A stretch of DNA of 64,000 nt. Source: Octopus sinensis (Eukaryota). The notes under the pieces were generated by a model. That model had not been told where the DNA came from and did not search any database. It worked only from the letters and a program-made list of their open reading frames with translations. This document shows positions 960 through 56,420 of this stretch, piece by piece. Location: the NCBI RefSeq assembly GCF_006345805.1, contig NC_043008.1:43586001-43650000 (forward strand), read 5' to 3'. Positions within the stretch are counted from its first letter, which is position 1; every line of letters begins with the position of its first letter. The position numbers were made by a program, and so were the translations under genes.

Positions 960-1324
960 GTGGACTTATGTCGGTGTTCTTAACAGGAGTATACAATCCA
1001 TTCACCAAAAAATGGTGTACCGTTAGCAAAGTTGGTAATGGTTTCGATGACAAAACCTTAGACCGTTTGCAGAAGGAGCTGAAGATGGTAAAAATTAGCA
1101 AGGATGTTCAGAAAGTACCATCTTGGTTAAATATAAAAAAGAGTGTCATACCAGATTTTATTGTTGAGGACCCACATCAGGCGCCAGTCTGGGAGATCAC
1201 CGGAGCAGAATTTAGCAAGGCTGAAATTCACACAGCTGATGGGATTTCCATCAGGTTCCCTCGTCTCACCAAAATACGAACAGATAAAAGCTGGAAAGAA
1301 GCAACTGACCTACCAAGGCTTAAG
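960..1324 (+). CDS. LIG3: DNA ligase III exon, OB-fold domain
   Basis: GLMSVFLTGVYNPFTKKWCTV...VWEITGAEFSKAEIHTADGISIRFPRLTKIRTDKSWKEATDLPRLK. WEITGAEFSK and GISIRFPR are LIG3 signatures. Pyrimidine tract with AG at 958-959; donor AAG|GTGAGT at 1325. Confidence 0.96.
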
Positions 1325-2065: not shown

Positions 2066-2368
2066 GAACTTTACAAGTCATCAAAAGAGGTGTCCGACTT
2101 TCCAAATCTCGTTACTCCGAAGGTCTCACCTGCAGATGACTCTTCTAAAGAAAATGACTTCAAAGGAGATGCGGAGCAAAGCAGCGATGAGCACAAGAAC
2201 AGCCAGTCGTCCCCGCAAAAGACTCCGGTCAAGCGGAAAATTCCGATGAAAGAGGAGCAGGAATCACCAGGACAATCTTCGAAAAGCAAAGCACGGAAAA
2301 TTGATGAAATGTTTCAGAAATCTCGTTCGGATAATGAGGGAGGGGACAAAAAATCCTCAACATCAAAG
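2066..2368 (+). CDS. LIG3: DNA ligase III exon, end of OB-fold plus Ser/Lys/Glu-rich linker
   Basis: Begins ELYKSSKE, continuing LK|ELY as in LIG3. AG at 2064-2065; donor AAG|GTAAAG at 2369; 303 nt, phase 0-0. Contains TPK, SPQK and TPVKRK (CDK/NLS-like motifs). Confidence 0.88.
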
Positions 2369-3058: not shown

Positions 3059-3169
3059 GAGAAGAAACCAATGTGTAAATATGGCAGTGGTTGTTACCAA
3101 AAGAATCCTCAACATTTGGCAGCTTTTGACCATTCTACATCTTCCAGTGGTGCTGCCAGTACTTCTGTG
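3059..3169 (+). CDS. LIG3: DNA ligase III exon encoding a PBZ (PAR-binding, zf-CCHH) zinc finger
   Basis: TTTGCAG acceptor at 3057-3058. Reads EKKPMCKYGSGCYQKNPQHLAAFDHSTSSSGAASTSV, with C-x5-C-x6-H-x5-H spacing and CxYG and FxH positions. Donor GTG|GTACAA at 3170; 111 nt, phase 0-0. Confidence 0.88.
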
Positions 3170-4752: not shown

Positions 4753-4844
4753 TCAGATCCTCTGCCCAATGTGTTCCGTAACATGAAGATTTACCTCCCT
4801 AAAAACATGGAATCCTACAAGAAACTGAAGAGATTCATTATTGC
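4753..4844 (+). CDS. LIG3: DNA ligase III exon, BRCT N-terminal part
   Basis: CTCTTCAG acceptor at 4751-4752. Reads SDPLPNVFRNMKIYLPKNMESYKKLKRFII+GC, similar to the LIG3 BRCT (L.DIF.G..LYLP....F..L.RYFVA). Ends at the U12 donor ATATCCTTT. Confidence 0.9.
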
Positions 4845-5745
4845 ATATCCTTTTATGGTTACAATGCTGGATGTTTGTTGTTGTTATTGTTTAACCCTTG
4901 TTTAGCCCTGATCCTGCAGGACCTATGATCAAAAGTGTCCCAACTGTGGGCCATCTTGTTTTTTTAAATATATCGTCCAACCCATGCTAGCATGGAAAGC
5001 GGACATTAAACGATGATGATATGTTTGCCAGGACATTGTCTAATGTGCTCTTCTCTTTTTGGAAAGAAGATTTAGCTGCTATTTCTAGTAGGTACAGTGG
5101 CTACACAGAAGCTATCTAATAAACTTGACTCTGTTATTGTTGCTGTTGTTTAGCCCCTGGTCATCTCTGATCCAACAGGACCTGTGATCAAAAATGTGGG
5201 CTATATCCCATTCACTGTCTGAATGTTTTTTTGAAATATGAAATGTAGGTTTCAAGAGAATGCTTATCCTTATGTCCTTTTGTCTAAAAACCTTTGTGAA
5301 CAACACCTGCAAAAATCGCTGCTCCAGTGTTACGCTTTTGATTTCATTTCAGGTTTTTGTGTTAATATTTTCATAAACATCATAAATTCTCTACAATTGA
5401 AGTCATGAAATTGTGTTGCTGTTTAAGCAATGTTCCAAAATAATACCTTCTATTAATACTAAGTACCATTTATGCAATTACAAGCCTCTTTGAATTTCAT
5501 TCTGGTCCAGAAAAAAACATTGATTTTCAAAATGTTTTATAGATTTTATTGATATATGTTTTAATGTGTGTATGTGTGTGACACTGTAGAATTGAACCTA
5601 AAACCCCTTTGCTTCAAAGTGAACATTGCAAACCACACAACCATATTCTTGCGTATTATTATAATTAAATATTTTGTGCCATTTTTACTCGTATTTAGTT
5701 CTAGTTGTCTGTGTCTCTCTAATTGTTTTCCTTAATTAATCGCAC
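4845..5745 (+). other. U12-type AT-AC intron (901 nt)
   Basis: 5' end ATATCCTTTT, branch-like TTTTCCTTAAT at 5726-5736, terminal CGCAC at 5741-5745. Splicing yields GC+T TTC GAT GGA = A-F-D-G, restoring the BRCT AFDG motif. Confidence 0.9.
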
Positions 5746-5818
5746 TTTCGATGGAGAAATATTGCCGGACCATGACATCTCCAACGCCACCCACCTTGTC
5801 ATTGTCAAAGACCTCAAT
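5746..5818 (+). CDS. LIG3: DNA ligase III exon, BRCT middle part
   Basis: T+FDGEILPDHDISNATHLVIVKDLN, resembling LIG3 FDGDLV.EFD...ATHV. Donor AAT|GTAGGT at 5819, phase 0. Confidence 0.88.
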
Positions 5819-6218
5819 GTAGGTTCAATCAAGATATTTTATTCAATTATTGTTATTGATATTAGCATGGATCAACGTATTTCTTATTTGTTTCTACCCT
5901 CAGATCAGCTCTAATCCAGCCAACCCCTGGTCAAAGAAGTGCCATGACCATCCAGTTATATTTTGATTTAAATGAATTATTTTTACAGATGTGTATAGGT
6001 GCTGGGTTGGCTGTGTGGTAAGAAGTCTTCAAAGGACAATGTGCTCGGGTAAACAGCGATCGGCAGGTGTTGCTTGTTGCCTCATTATTATCATATTGTT
6101 TATCATTTCATTTCATTATGTCTTCGTCCAGCCTGCAGCTTTCTTTCTTTGTAAGGCCCTTGTGGCCAATCTAACGAATAAAAGAAGTCTTCTTCTTGGT
6201 CATAAAAAAAAAAGAAAA

Positions 6219-6451
6219 AAAGGCGAGTTGGCAGAAACGTTAGCACGTCGGGCAAAATGCTTAGTGGTATTTCATCTGCCGTTACGTTCTGAGTTCAAAT
6301 TCCGCCGAGGTCAACTTTGCCTTTCATTCTTTCGGGGTCGATAAATAAAGTACCAGTTACGCACTGGGGTCGATGTAATCGACTTAATCCCTTTGTCTGT
6401 CCTTGTTTGTCCTCTCTATGTTTAACCCCTTGTGGGTAATAAAGAAATAAG
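6219..6451 (+). mobile_element. tRNA-headed SINE family C
   Basis: GGCGAGTTGGCAGAAACGTTAGCACG...GAGTTCAAATTCCGCCGAGG...CCCCTTGTGGGTAATAAAGAAAT. Homologous to 44871-45066 and 49640-50050. Confidence 0.85.
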
Positions 6452-6826
6452 AAGTCTGATCTCTCTGTTTATGACCTATGTAAGACTGATCACACTGTTT
6501 ATGACCTATGTGAGACTGATCACACTGTTTATGACCTATGTAAGACTGATCACCCTGTTTATGATTTATGTAAGACTGATCACCCTATTTATGACCTATG
6601 TGAGACTGATCACACTGTTTAAGACCTATGTAAGACTGATCACACTGTTTATGACCTATGTAAGACTGATCACCCTGTTTATGATCTATGTAAGACTGAT
6701 CTCTCAATAATCTATGTAAGACAGATCACCCTGTTTATAATCCATATAAGACTGATCTCACTATTTATGATAGCTCTACAAGACTGATCTTTCAGTTTAT
6801 GATATCTATGTGAGACTGATCTCTTA
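6452..6826. repeat. 30-bp minisatellite (ATGACCTATGTAAGACTGATCACACTGTTT), about 8 good and about 4 degenerate units
   Basis: Exact 30-nt periodicity in 6452-6703; translates as repeated FMTYVRLITL. Confidence 0.95.
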
Positions 6827-7494
6827 TGGTATTTAAATAGACATTAAAATGATGATGATAAATTTTCAAACTTTTCTTTTCCCAGCTTTTTCTATAAAAT
6901 GTTCTTAACATCTTTTATTTACAACATTTTGGTGTTGTTTATGGAAATAGATTTTTTAAAAACTATATTTCTAAAGTTTTGTAAAAATTTGTTACATTTT
7001 GTTGTTTATTGTGTTTGTATGAATGTGTGTATATATATATATATGTATGTGTGTGTATGTGTATTAGCATTAATGTATGTATAAACTGTGTGTGTATGTG
7101 TATGTGATTTTATGCTTAGCATATTAATAATTTTATAGTTTAAAATACCTATATGTGTGTGTGCATATGTGTGTCTTAATATGTATAAATGCATTAAAAG
7201 TTATACAGATTGTATGTGTGTGTGTGTGTTTTAGTATGTTTGTTTTAGTATGTATAGATGTATTAATGTACATACAGATTGTGTGTTTAGATATACCAGT
7301 GCATTTAGTTTTAGCAAACATGTATGTTAGTATGTATACATGTGTTAATGTTCATATATATTGTATGTGTTAGCATATATATTTTTTGCACACACATTGT
7401 GTGTGTGTGTGTTGGTGTGGTGTGTGGCTGTAGATATAACTTTTAAAATGTTTTTATTATTTCGGTATAGAGTAATATTATGAAAACTATATTA

Positions 7495-7525
7495 TATTTG
7501 AAGATTATTATTATTATTATTATTA

Positions 7526-7557
<32 letters not shown>

Positions 7558-7760
7558 TTTGTTGTTGTTGTTATTATTATTATCATTATTATTCTTATTA
7601 TTATTATCATTTTTTATTATTATTATTGTTATTATTTTTGTTATTATTTTTGTTGTTATTATTATTATTTTTATGATTTTTATTATTGTTGTTATTATTA
7701 TTATTATATTATTATTATTATTATTTTTATGATTTTTATTATTGTTGTTGTTATTACTAC
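7495..7760. repeat. (ATT/GTT)n trinucleotide microsatellite
   Basis: Directly visible in the sequence. Confidence 0.95.
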
Positions 7761-7898
7761 TGCTATATCTTGTTTCTTGTTGTAACTTCAAGTTTTCCAA
7801 AAACTAAAACTTTTTATTTTTTGTTTAATTCCATACACAAAAACCACCACCACCACCACCTCCAACACGACAATAACAACAACACCAAAATCCCTCAG

Positions 7899-8015
7899 GA
7901 AAGTGATGTCAGCTCAGCTTCGCCTTCGGCTGTCTGTATAACGTCCGAGTGGCTGTGGAAGTGTATTAAGAAGAAGCAGTGTGTACCAACACAAAAGTAT
8001 GTCTTCACTGCCTGA
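7899..8015 (+). CDS. LIG3: DNA ligase III last coding exon, BRCT C-terminus and stop
   Basis: CCCTCAG acceptor at 7897-7898. Reads ESDVSSASPSAVCITSEWLWKCIKKKQCVPTQKYVFTA*, containing the BRCT alpha-3 motif EWxWxCI. TGA at 8013-8015. Confidence 0.9.
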   Translation, partial: ESDVSSASPSAVCITSEWLWKCIKKKQCVPTQKYVFTA

Positions 8016-8139
8016 CAACGTCTTCATTACGAGCTGCATGCTTCCAGCTGCAGAGGAGGTAGACACACGGAAACTCTTTTATTTCATAGAAACTGTCTTT
8101 CTGATTTGTTTATAATTCTCTGATATTTACTTGCACACA

Positions 8140-8195
8140 TGCACACACACACACATGTGAATACATATATACATACACACTTATATATATATGTG

Positions 8196-8255
<60 letters not shown>

Positions 8256-8464
8256 CACACATATATATACACACATACATATATATATTGTACATACACA
8301 CATATATATACACACATACATATATATATATGTACATGCATACATATATATACATACATACACACTTATATATATATTATATATATATGCATATATATAT
8401 ATCATCATCATCATCATCATCGTTTAGCATGGAAAACGGACGCTAAACGATGATGATGATGATG

Positions 8465-8497
<33 letters not shown>

Positions 8498-8986
8498 AGT
8501 GTGTATGTATGTATACATATATGTATGTATATATATGTATGCATGTACATATATATATATGTATGTGTGTATATATGTGTGTATATATATATGTGTGTAT
8601 ATATATATATATGTGTGTGTATATATATATGTGTGTGTATATATATATGTGTGTGTATATATATATGTGTATATATCTATATATATATATATGTATATAT
8701 GTATGTGTGTATGTATATATGTATGTGTGTATGTATATATGTATGTGTGTATGTATACATATGTATATGTGTATATATATGTATGTGTGTATATGTATGT
8801 GTGTGTATATATATATATATTATATATATACATGCAGATGTATATAAGTATATGTGTGTATGTAAGTATATGAACGTCTGCATACAAAACTTTTTCTATC
8901 TTCATATATGTTATTAAATATATATATTTGTATGTAAAATATGTATTCACGTGTGTGTATGTATATATTTATATATTTGTGTGTGT

Positions 8987-9022
<36 letters not shown>

Positions 9023-9075
9023 GGCTAGATAGATATATACATACATACATATTTGTGTGTGTGTGTGTATGTGTG
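8140..9075. repeat. Compound (TA)/(TG)/(CA) microsatellite block containing a large palindrome
   Basis: Directly visible; the arms around 8435 are reverse-complementary. Confidence 0.9.
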
Positions 9076-9742
9076 TCAATAGAGAGAACTGAGGACATTC
9101 AATATTTTGTTTCCCCCACCCTTAAATAAAAAAAAAAAAAATTTCTCCCCACCCATTCCTTCACTCCCCCCCCCCACTTCGTCCGTCTCTTTAGTCTGAA
9201 TATCTTATTGTAAATATCTTTATAAGTTGCTGCCATACCAGCTCTGCATGTGTGTGTGTGTGTGTGTGTGTGTTATTAATTCTATAGAAATTCTTTTAAT
9301 GCACTGACAGAAAGTAAATGCAGTTTGTTTTGGTTTGTTTTTTTTTTACCTTCATTGTTGTTGTTTTTATGCATAAAAAATTGCCCCTCCCCCCTCTCTC
9401 CCGTTCCCACCCACTTTCACTAAAAAAAAGAAAAAGACAGAAAACGAAAACCCAAAAAAAATGTTGTTAAATTGTCCTTTAAAATGATATATAAATTTTT
9501 AAAAAATTTATATGTATATAATATATATATACATATATATATATATAGATATATATATACACATTTATATATGTAAGTGTGTGTATATGTATAAGAGTTA
9601 AGTGGAGGAATATTAGGAAAATGGTTTGTTATTGAAATGAATTCAAATTTTTGCTAATTCTAAAGAGAAAGTGAATAGAAATTATGATAATGCAATTTGC
9701 ATTAGGATTCCTAATATAAACATACAAATATGATGTATATAA

Positions 9743-19460: not shown

Positions 19461-20312
19461 CACACACACACACACACACACTCATTGCACACACGGCACG
19501 CACGCACACAAACTTGTTTGAGAAATCTTAATTCCTGATTTTATAAACGATTTGACTCGGTCTACTCAGCCACTTACAAGATTGTTGTTGTTTTTTTAAT
19601 CGTGTCTAAAATCGAAACATTTATTTTGATTGTATCATATGGAGCACAATTCCTCCGTTCAATGGATTTTTATCAATCTCCGAAATTTCAAATACTTGAA
19701 CATATTTTTATACTCGATGCCTCGATATCTCTTCCAATTAGAAATTCATCTCAGATCTTTTCCATTATTTTTTGGTTCTAATGATTCTGCAACTGGAACC
19801 AGAACTAAAAGCATTATCTTTGAGTGGAATTTTTTAAGGGAATGTTTCAAGTATGAAGAACACTTCTTGATTTTGTTTTCGTTTAGTTTCCTATCAGCAT
19901 TTATTATATTGCTTCGAGCTTCCCTCCTACATACACCCAACTAACAAAGAATACGCATCACAGAACATACTATTTTCTAGAATGCTTCTACAGCATCCAT
20001 TGATTAATCTATCATTTAGAATTTACTTTCTGCTTCAAAACAACAAGTTTTTTTTTCCTCAGACTTCGGTCTGGGAAACTCGGCAGCTCCCTTCGAAAGT
20101 TTTCGCCCCTATTTAATGCTTTGCGAATGATTAAAACACCGACAAGAGGGGGAGTATCTCCATTTCTCTGACCAATGCTGTAGTCATTAGTTCAGGCTCT
20201 TCGGTTAATTTCCTTAACTCGACATTTGACGTCGTTTATGATTTGATGCTCGAGATAAATTAGTTAGTTAGTTAGTTAGTTAATTTGGCTCAAAAGCAAA
20301 TAGCAAGGCCAT

Positions 20313-20948: not shown

Positions 20949-23900
20949 GTAGTGGCACCGCGGTACTTTTCCACAAGAGTCTGGATCTCAAAGTAAGGAC
21001 AATATTCGTAGACCCGGAGGGTAGACTGGTCGTCCTGGATGTCGACGGCAGCAATGGGTGCGCTTTTCGACTCGTATCAGTCTACGCACCGCCCTTAACA
21101 GGTCGGGCGGATTTCTTTCAACGTCTAGAAGTATTCTTGGGAACGTCTCGTCCTTTACTCTTAGTGGGGGGGTTGGAATGCCACCTTGGACACGCATGTA
21201 GACTACGTGGGTAGAGATAGGAATAGACGGGGATGCAAATGCCTCAGAGACCTGCTCAGACGCTTTCAACTGTCTGACAGGTTCCGACTAGACCACCCGA
21301 ATGCGCCAACGTGGACATGGAGCAACCGCATCGGGTCGTCGAGATCGTATCTAGATAGGATACTGTGTAGGACAGTAGACAGAGATAGCATAGGATGTCC
21401 ACAATTCCACATAGTCAGCTACACGGATCACAAACTTGTGACATGTACGCTAGACTTAGATAAGACACTTAGGCAGGGTCCCGGATACTGGAAACTAAAC
21501 GCGTCTTTCCCACCGAGACAGGTTTTCAGAGACCGGATTAGCACACTAGTAAAGAGGGCTTTGACGGGAGCCATCATCAACAACAAATGGTGGTTTACCC
21601 TCAAGAGAGCAGTAAAAGCAGAAGCGATTAGGTACAGCAAAGCACTAGCCATAGATAGAAATAGAGTAGAGGGTGAGCTAGTTAAGAAGCTAGAAGAGGC
21701 AATTAGAAGCGGCATCACATCCGACGTTTTGGCGGCGAGGTTGGCCCTCGACCAACACTTCAACGCCAAACACGAAGGATGTGCTGTCAGAGCTAGGATG
21801 CGTGCTCTAAGGAACGAAGGTGTTGGAGCCGCGAGAGAGGCCCGGGTGGCAGAGGCGCAACAGGGCAACAAAGCCACCATTCGGTCACTGGTAGATGAAC
21901 AGGGGCGCGAATTGCTCGAGCCAAGTAAAATGTGTGAGGCCTTTCAGCAGCATTTTGCCCGACTGTTCGGAACGAGTGGAGGGCAAGAACGTAGGGTGGA
22001 CTTCAGTGCCTACCTACATAGCCTACCACGACTCTCGACAAGAAAGGCAGGGTGCTGCGAAGGTGCCATCACGGCGGCGGAAGTGCAGGAAGCGATGGCA
22101 GAATGCTCGGGGGACAAATCACCGAGTTTGGATGGTCTACCCTACGAGCTTTACAATTGTATGCCAGACTTGTTTGGAGACCTCTTGGCGGCGGTGTACT
22201 GCAACTGGCAGCAAAACGGGAGCATTCCTGGTTTTGTGAGCCGAGGAGCCGTAACACTGCTGAAGAAAGATCTAAACAAGGGAAACATTATAGATAACTT
22301 TAGGCCCATCACTCTGCTTAATGCAGACTTGAAAATTTTGGCCAAGGTGCTAGCCAAGAGGTTGGCGCTTGTCATCGAGAAACTGGTCGACAGGGCGCAA
22401 ACATGCGCCGTGCCAGGCCGGACCATCCATGACAACCTCCACCTGATGCGCTACATCATAGACAGGGTAGTTAACGAACCTGGCATGGGTGGGGCGCTGA
22501 TCAATTTGGATCAATCGAAAGCTTTCGATAGGGTGGACCATCGATACTTGGAGGCGGTCCTCGGAGCGGCTGGCTTCGGTCCCGTCTTCCGCGGCTGGAT
22601 AGCCGCTTTGTACAGAGGCATCCGTTCGGTAATTCGCGTGAATGGACATCTATCGAGACCCTTCGACATAGCACGTTCGGTCCGTCAGGGATGCCCCCTC
22701 TCGTCGCTTCTATACGTATTGACTCTCGAGCCATTATTGCGGAAGCTGGCAACCTTGAGAGGCATCCCGCGAGAACTGGGATGCGGGACGAGCGTGTCTG
22801 CATACGCGGACGACGTCACCGTCATAGTGTCTAGCCACGAGCACATCGAGCAGGTCGGCGAGACACTGAAAAACTACGAAGCGGTGACAGGAGCAAAAAT
22901 CAACCGGGAAAAGTCAGTGGGCTTGCGACTCGCAGGACCTGGAGAGCAAGCCCATGCCGTCCACCAGCGCCTCCGTGTGGGACGCTGGACCGACGGCCCG
23001 GTTGAGTTGCTCGGGGTCTGGTTTGGTCCGGACCTCCAAGTGGAGAAGAACTGGAACGAGATAACGAGTAGGGTGGTCACTCTCGCCCGGCAATGGACCG
23101 AGAGGAAACTGTCCCTAAAAGGTCGGGCGGAGGTGGCGAACACGTACATCGCGTCCGTCATCTACTACCGCCTGACCGTCGTACCTTGTCCCGACCCTAC
23201 CATCACCAAACTACAACGCATTCTCTTTCGCTTCTTGTGGAAAGGATGCGTCCCGATGGTCAGGCGATCCATTTGTCAACACCCGTTTAAAAGGAGGGCT
23301 GGGCATGCAGTGGTGGTTGATGATGCGCAGACACGCGCTGAGACTGCAATATCTCTGGCTCTATGTAGACGACGGTGAACAGGTGTGGTCGCCGTTTGTG
23401 AGGCACGCTTTCCCGCAGCTCGTTCCATGACCGAACTGCAGTCGTGGATCAAAAAGAGGCCGAGAAGAAGGGCGAATGGCACCGCGAGTGTCGCGTTGCT
23501 CTCAAGCAACTCTGCTGTCCTGGGTCGACCTTGAGTGACTTCAACACAACCAAAGCATTCTATAGGGGTTTAGTGGAGGGGAGGTACGACGACGAGCTCG
23601 GGGCGAACCTGGACGTCGACGAGGAGTACCTGACCCGCCTGTTCAGGACGACTTTCGGGCCAGGGCCCATGGACAACTTCCAGAGATCCCTGGCCTGGCA
23701 GTGCTACGAGAAGCGCTACCCGTTCGGGATAAGCTCTACAGACACGGCTCGAGAAACACGGGGCCGATCTGCCCGAGATGCGGTCAGAGCGACGAAACCG
23801 TTCTGCACGCACTCGTGCAGTGTCCAACAATTTCCGACCTGTGGGCTTGTGTCGAACAACTGCTGTCACGTGTGGGACGAGTCGGTTTATCAGCTGAGTC

Positions 23901-24560
23901 TATCGTTAATATTGTCACGCCTCCCTCCTTCAAACGGGAAGGAAGAGCTATTTTCATCATCCTTGTGGCTATGGCGAAAGAATGTATCTGGTGGACGCAT
24001 CTGAAAGGATTGGAGACAAACACTTTCCTCTCTGGTCAATCTCTCATCAACTTCTTCAAGTACCACTTGAAAAGGAAAGTGAGAGTAGAGAGGCAAGTTT
24101 TTTCTAGCGAATGTTTTAAAAAAAGATGGGTGAATGTAGCAAGAATGGCACGTATGAATGACGAAGCCACCTTGAGCATGATCCTATGAACCCAGAAATT
24201 GAAAACAGAGAGTTGCTTATTTGCAAAAAAAAAAAAAAAAAGAAATATAACATGTGACTCCATTGACCGAGGTACCGTGGTCTTTTCCGTAGGCTTTTAT
24301 TTCCACGGGTAAACCTCACCTGTCCTCCCCTTTACACTTCATATTGACATTCTGTGATAACGATCCCTATTGATCAATTTTTTTTTTTTTCTTTAACCCC
24401 CCTTTTTTTTGTCCTCTTTCTCTCCTTTTACGATCCCTTTTGATCGAAACTCCCCCTTCCTGTTTTCTTTTTTTTTTTTTTTTTTAAACCTTCAAAAGAA
24501 AAGCTCTACCTTGTAATTTGTTCTATCTGTGTGCAGCCCTGTGTGGCTAATAAAGAAACA
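20949..24560 (+). mobile_element. 5'-truncated Tx1/L1-type non-LTR retrotransposon (APE endonuclease part, RT, CCHC), inactivated by frameshifts
   Basis: EN remnant (GRLVVLDV, VSVYAP, G-WNA, SYLDRI, YTDHK), WKLN linker, RT motifs FRPITLLNADLKIL, LDQSKAFDRVDH, VRQGCPLS and YADD, GGLG, and CPRCGQSDETVLHALVQC. Stop at 24189; the 3'UTR ends AATAAAGAAA. Confidence 0.93.
21186..23378 (+). pseudogene. Longest intact stretch (730 aa) of the LINE ORF2 endonuclease/reverse transcriptase
   Basis: From the ORF track. Bounded by a +1 frameshift at ~21170 and another at ~23290; the C-terminus continues in other frames to 24189. Confidence 0.88.
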
Positions 24561-26908: not shown

Positions 26909-27056
26909 CATACATACATATATACATACATACATATATGTATATATATCCTTTGCATCATGTTTTTATTTTGATAAATATACTCTATCACCTACACCAC
27001 TAAATGGCATATACAGGTGCTTACAATTATCACGTATTCACCCTGAATTTTTTATG

Positions 27057-35929: not shown

Positions 35930-36122
35930 CCGAGTCTGGGACATTTATCCCTCATGGACAATAATCCCACCAAGGACAATTACCCTTGAGGACAACAGAT
36001 GATGATTTAAAACTTCTTAATATACTGGAATGGGGGTAATTAACTAAGGGGGAGGGGTAATTGTCCTAGAGGGTAGTTGTCTTTGGAGAGGGGATTGTCC
36101 TGGGGTAATTGTCCTGATACGG
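35930..36122. mobile_element. MITE-like element with inverted GGACAATTACCC subterminal repeats
   Basis: The left half has GGACA(A/T)TTA(C/T)CC copies and the right half has GGGTAATTGTCC copies; imperfect CCG...CGG termini. Confidence 0.5.
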
Positions 36123-36159
36123 TTGCTCACAGTAATTTTACTGCTTGTCCTGACGCCAA

Positions 36160-37040
36160 CCATGTGTGTATATATGTTCAGGATATGACATACATACATA
36201 TATGCACACATGCATACATCCATACGTACATACGCACATATACGCACACATGTATGCATATATACGCACACATGTATGCATATATACGCACATATATTTT
36301 GAGTGGTAATTTGATTCAGTTCCTCATGTTTAAAGTTTAGTGGACGTGAAAGCACATCCATCGCTTCGGACATATCTATGTACGTGTATATGTGTGTATG
36401 TGTGTATATGTGTACAAGTGTGTATGTGTGTATGCGTATATGTGTATAAGTGTGTATGTGTATATGTGTGTATGTGTATATGTGTATATGTGTGTATATG
36501 TGTATGTGTATATGTGTACAAGTGTGTATGTGTATATGTGTGTATGTGTGTATGTGCATATGTGTATATGTGTGTATATGTGTATGTGTATATGTGTATA
36601 TGTGTATATGTGTGTATGTGCATATATGTATTTGTGTATGTGTATATGTGTATATGTGTATGTGTGTATCTGTATATGTGTACATGTGTGTATGTGTATA
36701 TGTGTATATGTGTATATAGGAACATGTGCATATGTGTATATATGTGTATATGTGTGTATATGTGTGTCTATATATATGTATATATATATGTATGTGTGTA
36801 TGAATGTTTGAATGTATTTATGTATGTATGCATAAATGTACAGTGTATGTATGAATGCATGTATGTGTATAATGAATGTATGTATGTGTATGTATGAATA
36901 TATGTATGCATGCGCACACACATATATATGCATATATATATATGCATATATATATATATATACATACATATATATATACATATATATATGTATGCATGTA
37001 TGTATATATATGTGTATGTATGTATGTATGTATATATATA
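36160..37040. repeat. Compound (TATGTG)n / (TA)n / (TATG)n satellite
   Basis: Directly visible in the sequence. Confidence 0.9.
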
Positions 37041-37744
37041 TACTAATCAAGTTCCTATTCCGACGTAGGCATTAAACGCCTCCTCCTCCCACTTGAATTG
37101 TATACGGCAGAGCAAGTACAAACAAGAGAAAAAAAACCGCCAGCCTCCACCTTCATACAGAAAATAACAACAACAACAGCAACAACAACAACAAAAACAA
37201 ACTCCGAAAAGCCGAAGAGAACCATTGTGTGTCGGTGTTGGTGCGGCAGCAGAACTAATTGTAAATTGTCGAGTAGCTTTGTGGTTTAGAGTGCAGAGGT
37301 GGACAATAAGATCATACCTATAGTTTATTCGGATGCAAAACACTTAGGGCCGGATGTGTGAAACATCTCTAATGGCAACAGCTTGCTTTGCAATTTGCTT
37401 TATGCACCAATGCTTATCACATACATCAAATTTTCCAACCCCCACATTTCATGACAAATAGATCGTTTCCGGAAATTTTGAAAAAAAAAGAAAAGAAAAA
37501 GAAAATGAGAATAAATGAAGAAAATATAAAATAATAAACTCACACATAAATACATACACACACATACATACACACGCAAATACGAAAACAAAATGGAGGA
37601 ATAACTAAGTGAAAATGATTAAAAAAAAGGCAAAAACATTTATCATTTATGGTTTGAAAATGATTACAATTCATATAACATTAATGAAGACAACAAATCT
37701 GAGTAGAGACACAGCAACATAACTGGAATTGCGGCACCAGCATT

Positions 37745-55204: not shown

Positions 55205-56107
55205 GCATGCATGTGTGTATGTATGTATGTGTGTATGTGTGTATGTACTTATGTATGTATGTATGTATGTGTGCATGTATTCATGTGTGTATGTAGGTAT
55301 GTGTGTATGTATGTGTGTATGTATGTACTTATGTATGTATGTGTGTGTATGTATGTATGTATGTATGTGTGCATGTGTTCATGTGTGTATGTAGGTATGT
55401 GTGTATGTATGTGTGTATGTATGTGTGTATGTATGTATGTACTTATGTATGTATGTATGTATGTATGTATGTAGTATGTATGTGTGCATGTGTTCATGTG
55501 TGTATGTAGGTATGTGTGTATGTATGTGTGTATGTATGTACTTATGTATGTATGTGTGTGTATGTATGTATATATGTATGTATGTGTGTGTGCATGTATT
55601 CATGTGTGTATGTAGGTATGTGTGTATGTATGTGTGTATGTATGTGTGTATGTATGTATGTACTTATGTATGTATGTATGTATGTATGTATGTATGTATG
55701 TTGTATGTATGTGTGCATGTGTTCATGTGTGTATGTAGGTATGTGTGTATGTATGTGTGTATGTATGTATATACGTACGCATGTACGTACGTGTGCATGT
55801 GTGCATGTGTGTATGTAAGTATGTGTGTATGTGTGTATGTATGTGTGTATGTATGTGTGTATGTATGTATGCATGTATGTACATGCATATGTATGCACAT
55901 GCATATACATATGTATGTATATATTTATGTTCGTACGTTTGTACACACAAATACATACACTCATGCACACACACATACATGCAGGCAAACAATTGATTGC
56001 AAGAAATATATAAGTAAAACAAAGAAAATTGTTAAGAAATTAAATGCATACACACAACATACACACAACAAACATACATACATACATACATATACATATA
56101 TATATAG

Positions 56108-56151
<44 letters not shown>

Positions 56152-56262
56152 TATATAGACATACATTTATACATACATGGATACATGCATACATCTATAC
56201 ATGCACACACACATACATCTATCATTACATACATGGATACATGCATACACCTATACATACGT

Positions 56263-56293
<31 letters not shown>

Positions 56294-56420
56294 AACGGTC
56301 GTGATGTATTAAACGCTATAGGAGCACACATGCACAAAAATACATACTCGAACATTCAGAAACACGTACGCGCGCACTCACACACACACACAGAAGCACA
56401 CATAGGCATACACACACGCA
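55205..56420. repeat. (ATGT)n-dominated compound satellite with higher-order units, then (AC/AT)n
   Basis: GTGCATGTxTTCATGTGTGTATGTAGGTATG recurs about five times. Confidence 0.9.

What the first reader, a model, noticed from the sequence alone, without database searches (positions are those of the whole stretch)
4845..5745. AT-AC minor-spliceosome (U12) intron splits the LIG3 BRCT domain
Seen: the intron starts ATATCCTTTT and ends TTTTCCTTAAT-TAATCGCAC, with the branch-like A about 10 nt from the end. Only this junction (GC|T TTC GAT GGA) restores the AFDG of the BRCT, and I found no GT-AG pair that does. Known: ATATCCTTT and TTCCTTAAC are the U12 donor and branch consensus; U12 introns are rare, AT-AC ones are a minority of them, and they can be rate-limiting. 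Standard gene predictors often mis-model them, so the annotated protein may be wrong here. Inference: retention reads on into AYPFMVTMLDVCCCYCLTLV* (stop 4903-4905), removing most of the XRCC1-binding BRCT, so minor splicing could gate that interaction.
Basis: partly seen in the sequence, partly recalled or inferred. Interest (0 to 1): 0.8.

Follow-up and report, generated by a model that had tools for sequence, protein, structure and literature searches.

The report
Ancient U12 AT-AC intron in LIG3
The DNA ligase III gene of this (probably octopod) animal has a real minor-spliceosome AT-AC intron inside its BRCT domain; it is a good example of a well-known intron class, conserved since the coral-bilaterian ancestor, and it causes annotation errors but is not a new mechanism.

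Summary
The 901-nt interval 4845-5745 starts ATATCCTTTT. It carries TTCCTTAAT with the branch A 10-11 nt from the end, has no polypyrimidine tract, and ends in AC. Joining 4844 to 5746 gives KRFIIA|FDGEI inside a full-length Pfam LIG3_BRCT match. Only one GT-AG pair keeps the frame open, and it deletes 26 conserved residues.

Comparison with other species decides the case. The same phase-2 position holds a U12-type GT-AG intron in a coral, seven coral-like contigs, a stink bug and contig L061. A U12 GT donor is also present in a shrimp. The position holds a U2-type intron in a sponge, a thrips and one unknown compact genome. There is no intron there in a frog, a bryozoan or a mite. So this is an ancient minor intron that switched subtype to AT-AC in this lineage.

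The mis-annotation concern holds in other species: the shrimp model reads into the intron (…AYPFMIISV*), and two other models look broken at this point.

The idea that retention gates XRCC1 binding is untested. The retained transcript has a stop 913 nt before the last exon junction, so decay is more likely than a truncated protein. No RNA data were available. Verdict: a new member of a known kind, of modest interest.

The parts
960..1324 (+). LIG3 exon encoding the OB-fold (DNA_ligase_A_C) region. It has an AG acceptor and a GTGAGT donor.
   Evidence: Pfam PF04679 E=1.5e-13. 78% identical to the exon in L004.
2066..2368 (+). LIG3 linker exon (ELYKSSKEV..., Ser/Lys-rich). U2-type GT-AG introns lie on both sides.
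   Evidence: tblastn match to L004 14475-14732.
3059..3169 (+). LIG3 exon encoding a PBZ (zf-CCHH) zinc finger, CKYGSGCYQKNPQHLAAFDH.
   Evidence: Pfam PF10283 E=3.8e-11.
4753..4844 (+). BRCT exon 1 (SDPLPNVFRNMKIYLPKNMESYKKLKRFII plus GC of the Ala codon). It ends in phase 2.
   Evidence: It encodes the first 30 residues or so of the 78-position Pfam LIG3_BRCT match.
4845..5745 (+). U12-type AT-AC intron, 901 nt.
   Evidence: Orthologous U12 introns in other species.
4845..4853 (+). U12 5' splice site ATATCCTTT, a 9/9 match to the AT-AC consensus.
   Evidence: The homologous position has GTATCCTTT in Desmophyllum, Penaeus and Nezara.
4903..4905 (+). In-frame TAG reached if the intron is retained (…AYPFMVTMLDVCCCYCLTLV*).
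5728..5736 (+). U12 branch-point sequence TTCCTTAAT. The branch A at 5734/5735 lies 10-12 nt from the 3' splice site, and no polypyrimidine tract follows.
5744..5745 (+). Terminal AC of the intron.
5746..5818 (+). BRCT exon 2 (T completes the Ala codon, then FDGEILPDHDISNATHLVIVKDLN). It ends in phase 0 with donor GTAGGT.
5819..7898 (+). Last LIG3 intron, U2-type GT-AG. It contains a 30-nt minisatellite and an (ATT)n run.
7899..8015 (+). Last coding exon (ESDVSSASPSAVCITSEWLWKCIKKKQCVPTQKYVFTA*). The stop TGA is at 8013-8015.
   Evidence: It aligns to the C-terminal part of the human LIG3 BRCT in PDB 6wh1_B.

Best explanation
Interval 4845-5745 is a genuine U12-type (minor-spliceosome) intron of the AT-AC subtype in the DNA ligase III gene. 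The host is probably an octopod cephalopod. The intron sits in phase 2, inside the Ala codon of the conserved KR[FY]I[IV]A|[FY]DG strand of the C-terminal BRCT domain.

Inferred mechanism, from established knowledge of U12 splicing:
- U11 and later U6atac pair with ATATCCTTT.
- U12 pairs with TTCCTTAAT and bulges the branch A 10-12 nt from the 3' end.
- Exons 4753-4844 and 5746-5818 are joined to give ...KRFIIAFDGEI...

The intron is ancient and dates at least to the cnidarian-bilaterian ancestor. It is U12 GT-AG in corals, a stink bug and contig L061, and a shrimp carries the U12 GT donor. It switched terminal dinucleotides to AT-AC in this lineage. It was converted to U2-type or deleted in other lineages.

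Its most likely role is ordinary constitutive splicing. Like other minor introns, it may be removed slowly and so limit LIG3 output.

Shown here: the sequence features, the unique frame-preserving junction, and conservation of position and class. Inferred: actual use of the junction in RNA, and the snRNP interactions.
For: - Both motifs sit exactly at the exon edges and are spaced correctly.
- The four other LIG3 introns in the window are ordinary GT-AG introns.
- Only this junction keeps the conserved sequence.
- The spliced product gives a full-length Pfam LIG3_BRCT match, positions 1-78 of 78, E=9.7e-22. It aligns without a gap across the junction to the human LIG3 BRCT in PDB 6wh1_B, E=1e-13.
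- Transcript-derived homologues read straight through the junction, for example P0001 KRYIIAFDGEIV.
- Same position and phase, U12 GT-AG: Desmophyllum ATTGC|GTATCCTTTGAC...CTTTCTTAACTTATCGTGTACTGTAG|T. Nezara GTTGC|GTATCCTTTTTT...TTTTCCTTGAC...ATATAG|A. Penaeus donor ATTGC|GTATCCTTTTATG.
- A metagenome pattern scan found seven coral-like contigs, plus L061, with complete U12 GT-AG introns. It also found three more GT-type donors and a second AT-type donor in L024.
- RTATCCTTT occurs only 8 times in about 218 kb of fetched orthologous loci. Three of the eight are at this codon, and two of the others that I inspected are intronic chance hits.
- The intron is in phase 2, which fits the known bias of minor introns away from phase 0. 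Molluscs are reported as relatively rich in minor introns (PMC10639083).
Against: - No RNA evidence from this species could be obtained. Its genome and transcriptome are absent from the searched protein collection.
- No minor-spliceosome snRNA gene lies in the window, so the machinery is inferred from the literature on molluscs.
- The closest relative found (L004, 78% identical in the OB-fold exon) did not reach the BRCT exons within the retrievable flank. No second cephalopod or mollusc intron could therefore be compared.
- The Nezara branch-site-to-AG distance is long, about 25 nt.
Confidence: 0.9

Rival explanations
1. Regulated switch. Slow or conditional minor splicing leaves the intron in a fraction of transcripts. 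These are translated into a LIG3 that ends ...KRFIIAYPFMVTMLDVCCCYCLTLV and lacks about 48 of the 78 BRCT residues, so it cannot bind XRCC1. This would be a functional analogue of vertebrate LIG3-beta.
For: - Read-through does reach a stop after 20 codons.
- It removes most of the Pfam BRCT match.
- The U12 class of this intron has been kept in several phyla.
- Vertebrates make a form of LIG3 that XRCC1 does not bind, by alternative splicing (references 40-41 cited in PMC7797052).
- One AATAAA lies in the intron at 5118-5123.
Against: - There are no expression data.
- The stop lies 913 nt upstream of the last exon junction, which favours decay of the retained RNA.
- The read-through tails are short and share nothing beyond the YP[FL] imposed by the splice motif. 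They are 6 residues after the Ala in the coral, 8 in the shrimp, 11 in the stink bug and 19 here.
- The intron was deleted or converted to U2-type in many lineages without visible compensation.
- One AATAAA in 901 AT-rich bases is about what chance gives.
Confidence: 0.08
2. The major spliceosome removes the interval through cryptic GT-AG sites, or as a rare U2-type AT-AC intron. On this reading the U12-like motifs are incidental.
For: One in-frame GT-AG pair exists (4777/5757).
Against: - That pair deletes 26 residues (RNMKIYLPKNMESYKKLKRFIIAFDGE), including the most conserved strand of the domain.
- The donor is a 9/9 match to the U12 consensus and unlike a U2 donor.
- There is no polypyrimidine tract and no AG between 5704 and 5755.
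- Orthologues carry the same U12 motifs.
Confidence: 0.02

Closest known systems
U12-type (minor-spliceosome) introns of the AT-AC subtype. In my recollection these were first described in genes such as NOP2/P120 and SCN4A. AT-AC makes up about a quarter of human minor introns (PMC10639083).
   Same: It has an ATATCCTTT donor, a TCCTTAAY branch site 10-12 nt from the 3' end, no polypyrimidine tract, a terminal AC, a non-zero phase, and is a single minor intron among U2-type neighbours.
   Different: Nothing structural differs. Only the host gene and position are not discussed in the literature I could search (0 relevant papers).
The orthologous U12-type GT-AG intron of LIG3 in Desmophyllum pertusum, coral-like metagenome contigs, Nezara viridula and contig L061. 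Penaeus vannamei carries the matching U12 GT donor; its 3' end was not found.
   Same: The codon position and phase are identical (after GC of the Ala codon in KRYIIA|[YF][DG]G). The TATCCTTT core and the TCCTTRAY-like branch site are the same.
   Different: The terminal dinucleotides are AT-AC here and GT-AG there. This is a subtype switch that needs a change at both ends. Lengths differ: 901 nt here against 128-365 nt in the coral-like contigs and L061, and 1565 nt in Nezara.
Vertebrate LIG3 alpha/beta alternative splicing, which produces a form of LIG3 that XRCC1 does not bind.
   Same: A splicing decision near the C-terminal end of LIG3 determines whether the XRCC1-binding BRCT is present.
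   Different: By my recollection, the vertebrate event uses an alternative 3' exon. In the frog locus the BRCT is a single exon with no intron at this site. No alternative isoform is shown for this window.

Membership tests
U12-type intron, AT-AC subtype | 5' splice site matching ATATCCTTT from +1 | tested here: met
   ATATCCTTT at 4845-4853, 9/9.
U12-type intron, AT-AC subtype | Branch-point sequence TCCTTRAY close to the 3' end (branch A about 10-15 nt upstream) | tested here: met
   TTCCTTAAT at 5728-5736. The A at 5734/5735 is 10-12 nt from exon base 5746.
U12-type intron, AT-AC subtype | No polypyrimidine tract between the branch site and the 3' splice site; terminal AC | tested here: met
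   The sequence after the branch site is TAATCGCAC, ending in AC at 5744-5745. The four neighbouring introns have T-rich tracts and AG.
U12-type intron, AT-AC subtype | The junction restores the conserved reading frame, and no canonical alternative does | tested here: met
   Enumeration of all pairs. Full-length Pfam LIG3_BRCT match. Alignment to the human LIG3 BRCT.
U12-type intron, AT-AC subtype | An orthologous intron of U12 class at the same position in other species | tested here: met
   Coral, stink bug, shrimp donor, seven coral-like contigs, L061, and the L024 AT-type donor.
U12-type intron, AT-AC subtype | Spliced junction observed in RNA of this species | not testable with these tools
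   No RNA-seq access. No same-species protein or transcript is in the collection.
U12-type intron, AT-AC subtype | Dependence on U11/U12/U4atac/U6atac, and presence of these snRNAs in the genome | not testable with these tools
   There is no Rfam hit in the 64-kb window, and the rest of the genome is not available. The literature reports molluscs as relatively rich in minor introns (PMC10639083).
DNA ligase III (LIG3) C-terminal BRCT | Match to the LIG3-specific BRCT profile downstream of a DNA_ligase_A_C OB-fold | tested here: met
   PF16759 E=9.7e-22 covering positions 1-78 of 78, and PF04679 E=1.5e-13. The best homologues are named DNA ligase 3. PDB LIG3 BRCT chains match at E about 1e-13.
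DNA ligase III (LIG3) C-terminal BRCT | Binding to the XRCC1 C-terminal BRCT | not testable with these tools
   Inferred only from homology to the human domain in 6wh1/3pc8 (PMC7797052).

The most novel reading that the evidence does not exclude
The U12 class of this intron has been kept for more than 600 million years because slow or conditional minor splicing sets LIG3 dosage. A variant of the idea is that it produces a BRCT-less, XRCC1-independent ligase (for example for mitochondria or the germ line). That would be an invertebrate counterpart of the vertebrate alpha/beta switch, achieved by intron retention.
Probability: 0.08. Interest if true: 0.6.

Novelty: new member of a known kind. 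Interest (0 to 1): 0.3.

Why it matters
- **Annotation.** Any LIG3 model for this species and its relatives must allow an AT-AC junction at 4844/5746. Otherwise the BRCT is truncated or skipped. This is shown for the Penaeus vannamei model and is likely for a Batillaria and a EukProt model.
- **Evolution.** In one gene, the same site shows all the known fates of a minor intron: retention as U12 GT-AG, a subtype switch to AT-AC, conversion to U2-type, and deletion. It is useful as a marker and a teaching case.
- **Biology.** It places a DNA-repair ligase among the minor-intron genes of invertebrates but not of the one vertebrate examined. Effects of minor-spliceosome perturbation on LIG3 would therefore differ between these groups.

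None of this changes the current understanding of minor splicing.

Tried and rejected
- A search with the 55-residue spliced peptide alone found nothing. The 352-residue C-terminal model was needed.
- No same-species or near-identical LIG3 is in the collection. The closest genomic relative (L004, ENA ERZ21867824) ends before the BRCT exons.
- The downstream BRCT exons of Penaeus could not be found within 10 kb. An assembly gap lies at L001 18244-19151. Only the Penaeus donor is documented.
- The P0033 contigs had no DNA on file. P0047 (a spider) was not on record.
- Two other RTATCCTTT sites, in the frog and shrimp LIG3 loci, were checked as possible further U12 donors. Both were rejected as intronic chance matches.
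- Rfam found nothing in the window.
- Four metagenome contigs with U12-type donors (L024, L064-L066) ended, or diverged too far, before an acceptor could be assigned.
- Literature searches combining LIG3 or DNA ligase III with 'minor intron', 'U12-type' or 'minor spliceosome' returned nothing relevant.
- I considered and rejected four alternatives: a cryptic GT-AG pair, a U2-type AT-AC intron, a pseudogene (all six exons are open and conserved), and a chance motif.

Full report
**1. The observation**

The sequence is as described.
- The upstream exon ends ...AGATTCATTATTGC at 4844.
- Position 4845 begins ATATCCTTTTATGG.
- TTCCTTAAT lies at 5728-5736.
- The interval ends ...TTAATCGCAC at 5745.
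- The next exon starts TTTCGATGGAGAAATA.

Translations confirm the coding content.
- Exon 4753-4844 encodes SDPLPNVFRNMKIYLPKNMESYKKLKRFII plus GC.
- Exon 5746-5818 supplies T, which completes the Ala codon, then FDGEILPDHDISNATHLVIVKDLN.
- Read-through gives AYPFMVTMLDVCCCYCLTLV*, with TAG at 4903-4905.

Each motif alone is no rarer than chance in 64 kb. ATATCCTT occurs twice with 4.2 expected, and TTCCTTAAY twice with 1.5 expected. What is not chance is that both sit exactly on the exon edges fixed by homology, at the right spacing. My estimate of the joint probability is about 1e-8 to 1e-7.

**2. Gene context**

I rebuilt the C-terminal part of the gene on the + strand.

| Exon | Content |
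|---|---|
| 960-1324 | OB-fold |
| 2066-2368 | linker |
| 3059-3169 | PBZ zinc finger |
| 4753-4844 | BRCT part 1 |
| 5746-5818 | BRCT part 2 |
| 7899-8015 | BRCT part 3, stop TGA 8013-8015 |

The other four introns are ordinary GT-AG introns with pyrimidine-rich 3' ends.

The 352-residue product matches four Pfam families:
- DNA_ligase_A_C, E=1.5e-13.
- zf-CCHH/PBZ, E=3.8e-11.
- LIG3_BRCT over the whole 78-position profile, E=9.7e-22.
- BRCT_2.

It aligns to the human LIG3 BRCT in the XRCC1 complex 6wh1_B with no gap at the junction, E=1e-13. The intron falls after about 30 of the 78 BRCT residues, so "splits the LIG3 BRCT" is accurate.

A LINE reverse-transcriptase ORF at 21186-23378 has its only named relatives in Argonauta hians, at 65% and 52% identity. 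This fits an octopod cephalopod.

**3. Is another splice possible?**

I enumerated every GT-AG, GC-AG and AT-AC pair around the two exons that keeps the frame open.
- Only one canonical pair exists (4777/5757), and it removes 26 conserved residues.
- Only 4844/5746 gives KRFIIAFDGEI.
- There is no AG between 5704 and 5755.
- All three frames upstream of 5723 hit stop codons.

**4. Comparative evidence (the decisive part)**

Homologues found with the C-terminal model read ...KR[YF][IF][IV]A[FY][DG]G... without interruption in transcript-derived sequences. I fetched genomic loci and mapped the exons. The intron position is identical in every species that has one: phase 2, after the second base of the Ala, Ser or Gly codon.

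| Taxon / locus | State at this position | Sequence |
|---|---|---|
| This window | U12 AT-AC, 901 nt | GC\|ATATCCTTT...TTCCTTAATTAATCGCAC\|T |
| Coral Desmophyllum (L002) | U12 GT-AG | GC\|GTATCCTTTGAC...CTTTCTTAACTTATCGTGTACTGTAG\|T |
| Stink bug Nezara (L008) | U12 GT-AG, 1565 nt | GC\|GTATCCTTTTTT...TTTTCCTTGAC...ATATAG\|A |
| Shrimp Penaeus (L001) | U12 GT donor; 3' end not found | GC\|GTATCCTTTTATG |
| Sponge Geodia (L006) | U2 GT-AG, 65 nt | TC\|GTAAGC...TTGTTCAG\|G |
| Thrips Frankliniella (L009) | U2 GT-AG, about 90 nt | GG\|GTACTG...CAACAG\|C |
| Unknown compact genome (L007) | U2 GT-AG, 66 nt | GC\|GTAAGT...TTATTAG\|T |
| Frog Ranitomeya (L003) | no intron; BRCT in one exon | |
| Bryozoan Bugula (L005) | no intron | |
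| Mite Tropilaelaps (L010) | no intron | |

Eight ORF-called proteins stop exactly at ...KRYI[IV]A or ...KRYVIS. This is what a GC|GTAA or GC|GTGA donor would produce.

I then scanned the metagenome collection with a degenerate pattern for this exon end plus RTATCCTT. Of 63 hits, 12 are true LIG3 BRCT exons.
- Seven coral-like contigs and L061 have complete U12 GT-AG introns. The branch sites are TTTTCTTAAC or ATCTTTAAC, 13-14 nt from the AG.
- Three more contigs carry GT-type donors.
- One (L024) carries a second AT-type donor, ATATCCTTTCAC.

In the ten orthologous loci (about 218 kb), RTATCCTTT occurs only eight times. Three of the eight are at this codon. Two of the others that I inspected are intronic chance hits.

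**5. What it is and how it works**

This is an ancient U12-type intron, present at least in the cnidarian-bilaterian ancestor. Because corals, a hemipteran and a crustacean all have G at +1, the GT-AG form is most simply ancestral. The AT-AC form here is then a subtype switch.

Other lineages show minor-to-major conversion or deletion. These are the fates described for minor introns in general (PMC10639083). The same paper notes that molluscs are relatively rich in minor introns, and that minor introns avoid phase 0. This intron is in phase 2.

The splicing mechanism is inferred from established knowledge, not shown here. It involves U11/U6atac pairing at the donor, U12 pairing at the branch site, and exon joining at 4844|5746.

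**6. The functional inference**

Retention would truncate the BRCT after about 30 residues. Disrupting the BRCT-BRCT contact destabilises nuclear LigIII-alpha in mammals. The mitochondrial role of LigIII does not need the BRCT (PMC7797052). A BRCT-less isoform is therefore conceivable, but several points count against it.
- The stop lies 913 nt upstream of the last exon junction, which favours decay of the retained RNA.
- The read-through tails in four species share only the YP[FL] imposed by the motif.
- Many lineages lost or converted the intron.
- No expression data exist here.

I rate this idea at about 0.08.

**7. Annotation consequence**

- The Penaeus vannamei model P0035 ends ...KRYIIAYPFMIISV*, which is read-through into this intron.
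- EukProt P0024 carries an inserted YPFTQAFSSK at the junction.
- The gastropod Batillaria model P0034 jumps from the linker to ...LVTPDWLWKCIK, so it appears to skip both flanking exons. I could not check this against its genome.

The annotation of this species itself could not be examined.

**8. Novelty and verdict**

The kind is well known. I found no paper that links LIG3 to minor splicing. Automated intron catalogues may already list the intron. I classify it as a new member of a known kind, real and well supported at the DNA level. It has modest interest (0.3), mainly for annotation and as a clear example of minor-intron evolution. RNA evidence is the one missing piece.

Noticed in passing
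window 3059-3169 (+): The LIG3 here carries a PBZ (zf-CCHH, poly-ADP-ribose-binding) zinc finger exon, CKYGSGCYQKNPQHLAAFDH, between the OB-fold and the BRCT (Pfam PF10283, E=3.8e-11). The same domain is precomputed for the coral and several invertebrate LIG3 hits, but not for the frog, fish or mammal-like hits.
   Followed up: partly
L001 15208-15321 (Penaeus vannamei QCYY01001569.1); proteins P0035, P0024, P0034: Public gene models appear broken at this intron. The shrimp LIG3 model reads through to AYPFMIISV* and lacks the rest of the BRCT. EukProt P0024 has a YPFTQAFSSK insertion. The Batillaria P0034 model seems to skip both flanking exons.
   Followed up: partly
window 21186-24189 (+): A LINE-type retrotransposon lies here. 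Its ORF is 730 residues and carries a reverse-transcriptase domain. The best named relatives are Argonauta hians hypothetical proteins (65% and 52% identity), which points to an octopod origin for the window.
   Followed up: partly
window 6452-6821 and 7504-7756: The last LIG3 intron contains a 30-nt minisatellite (10.8 copies, 85% matches) and an (ATT)n run of about 85 copies.
   Followed up: no
window 4875-4938 and 5134-5197: A 64-nt direct repeat (80% identity) lies inside the U12 intron. Its core is found nowhere else in the window. It looks like a local duplication or two fragments of a repeat with a (TTG)n-rich head.
   Followed up: partly
window 26946-26953 (+) and 20210-20218 (+): The only other ATATCCTT and TTCCTTAAC matches in the window. 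The first lies in TA/CA-rich microsatellite DNA with no visible exon. I did not examine whether either belongs to another minor intron.
   Followed up: no
L024 4103 (marine metagenome contig OREC01013186): A second, divergent LIG3 BRCT exon (…EFKKYKRYII) is followed by an AT-subtype U12 donor, ATATCCTTTCAC. The AT-AC form is therefore not unique to this window. The acceptor was not found in the remaining 1.6 kb.
   Followed up: partly
window 7000-9100, 36000-37100, 55400-56300 and elsewhere: There are very long TA/TG/CA-type microsatellite tracts, which give spurious ORFs rich in Y, I, C, V, H and T. Apart from the LIG3 3' end and the LINE, no other convincing protein-coding gene was seen among ORFs of at least 110 residues in 8-64 kb.
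   Followed up: no
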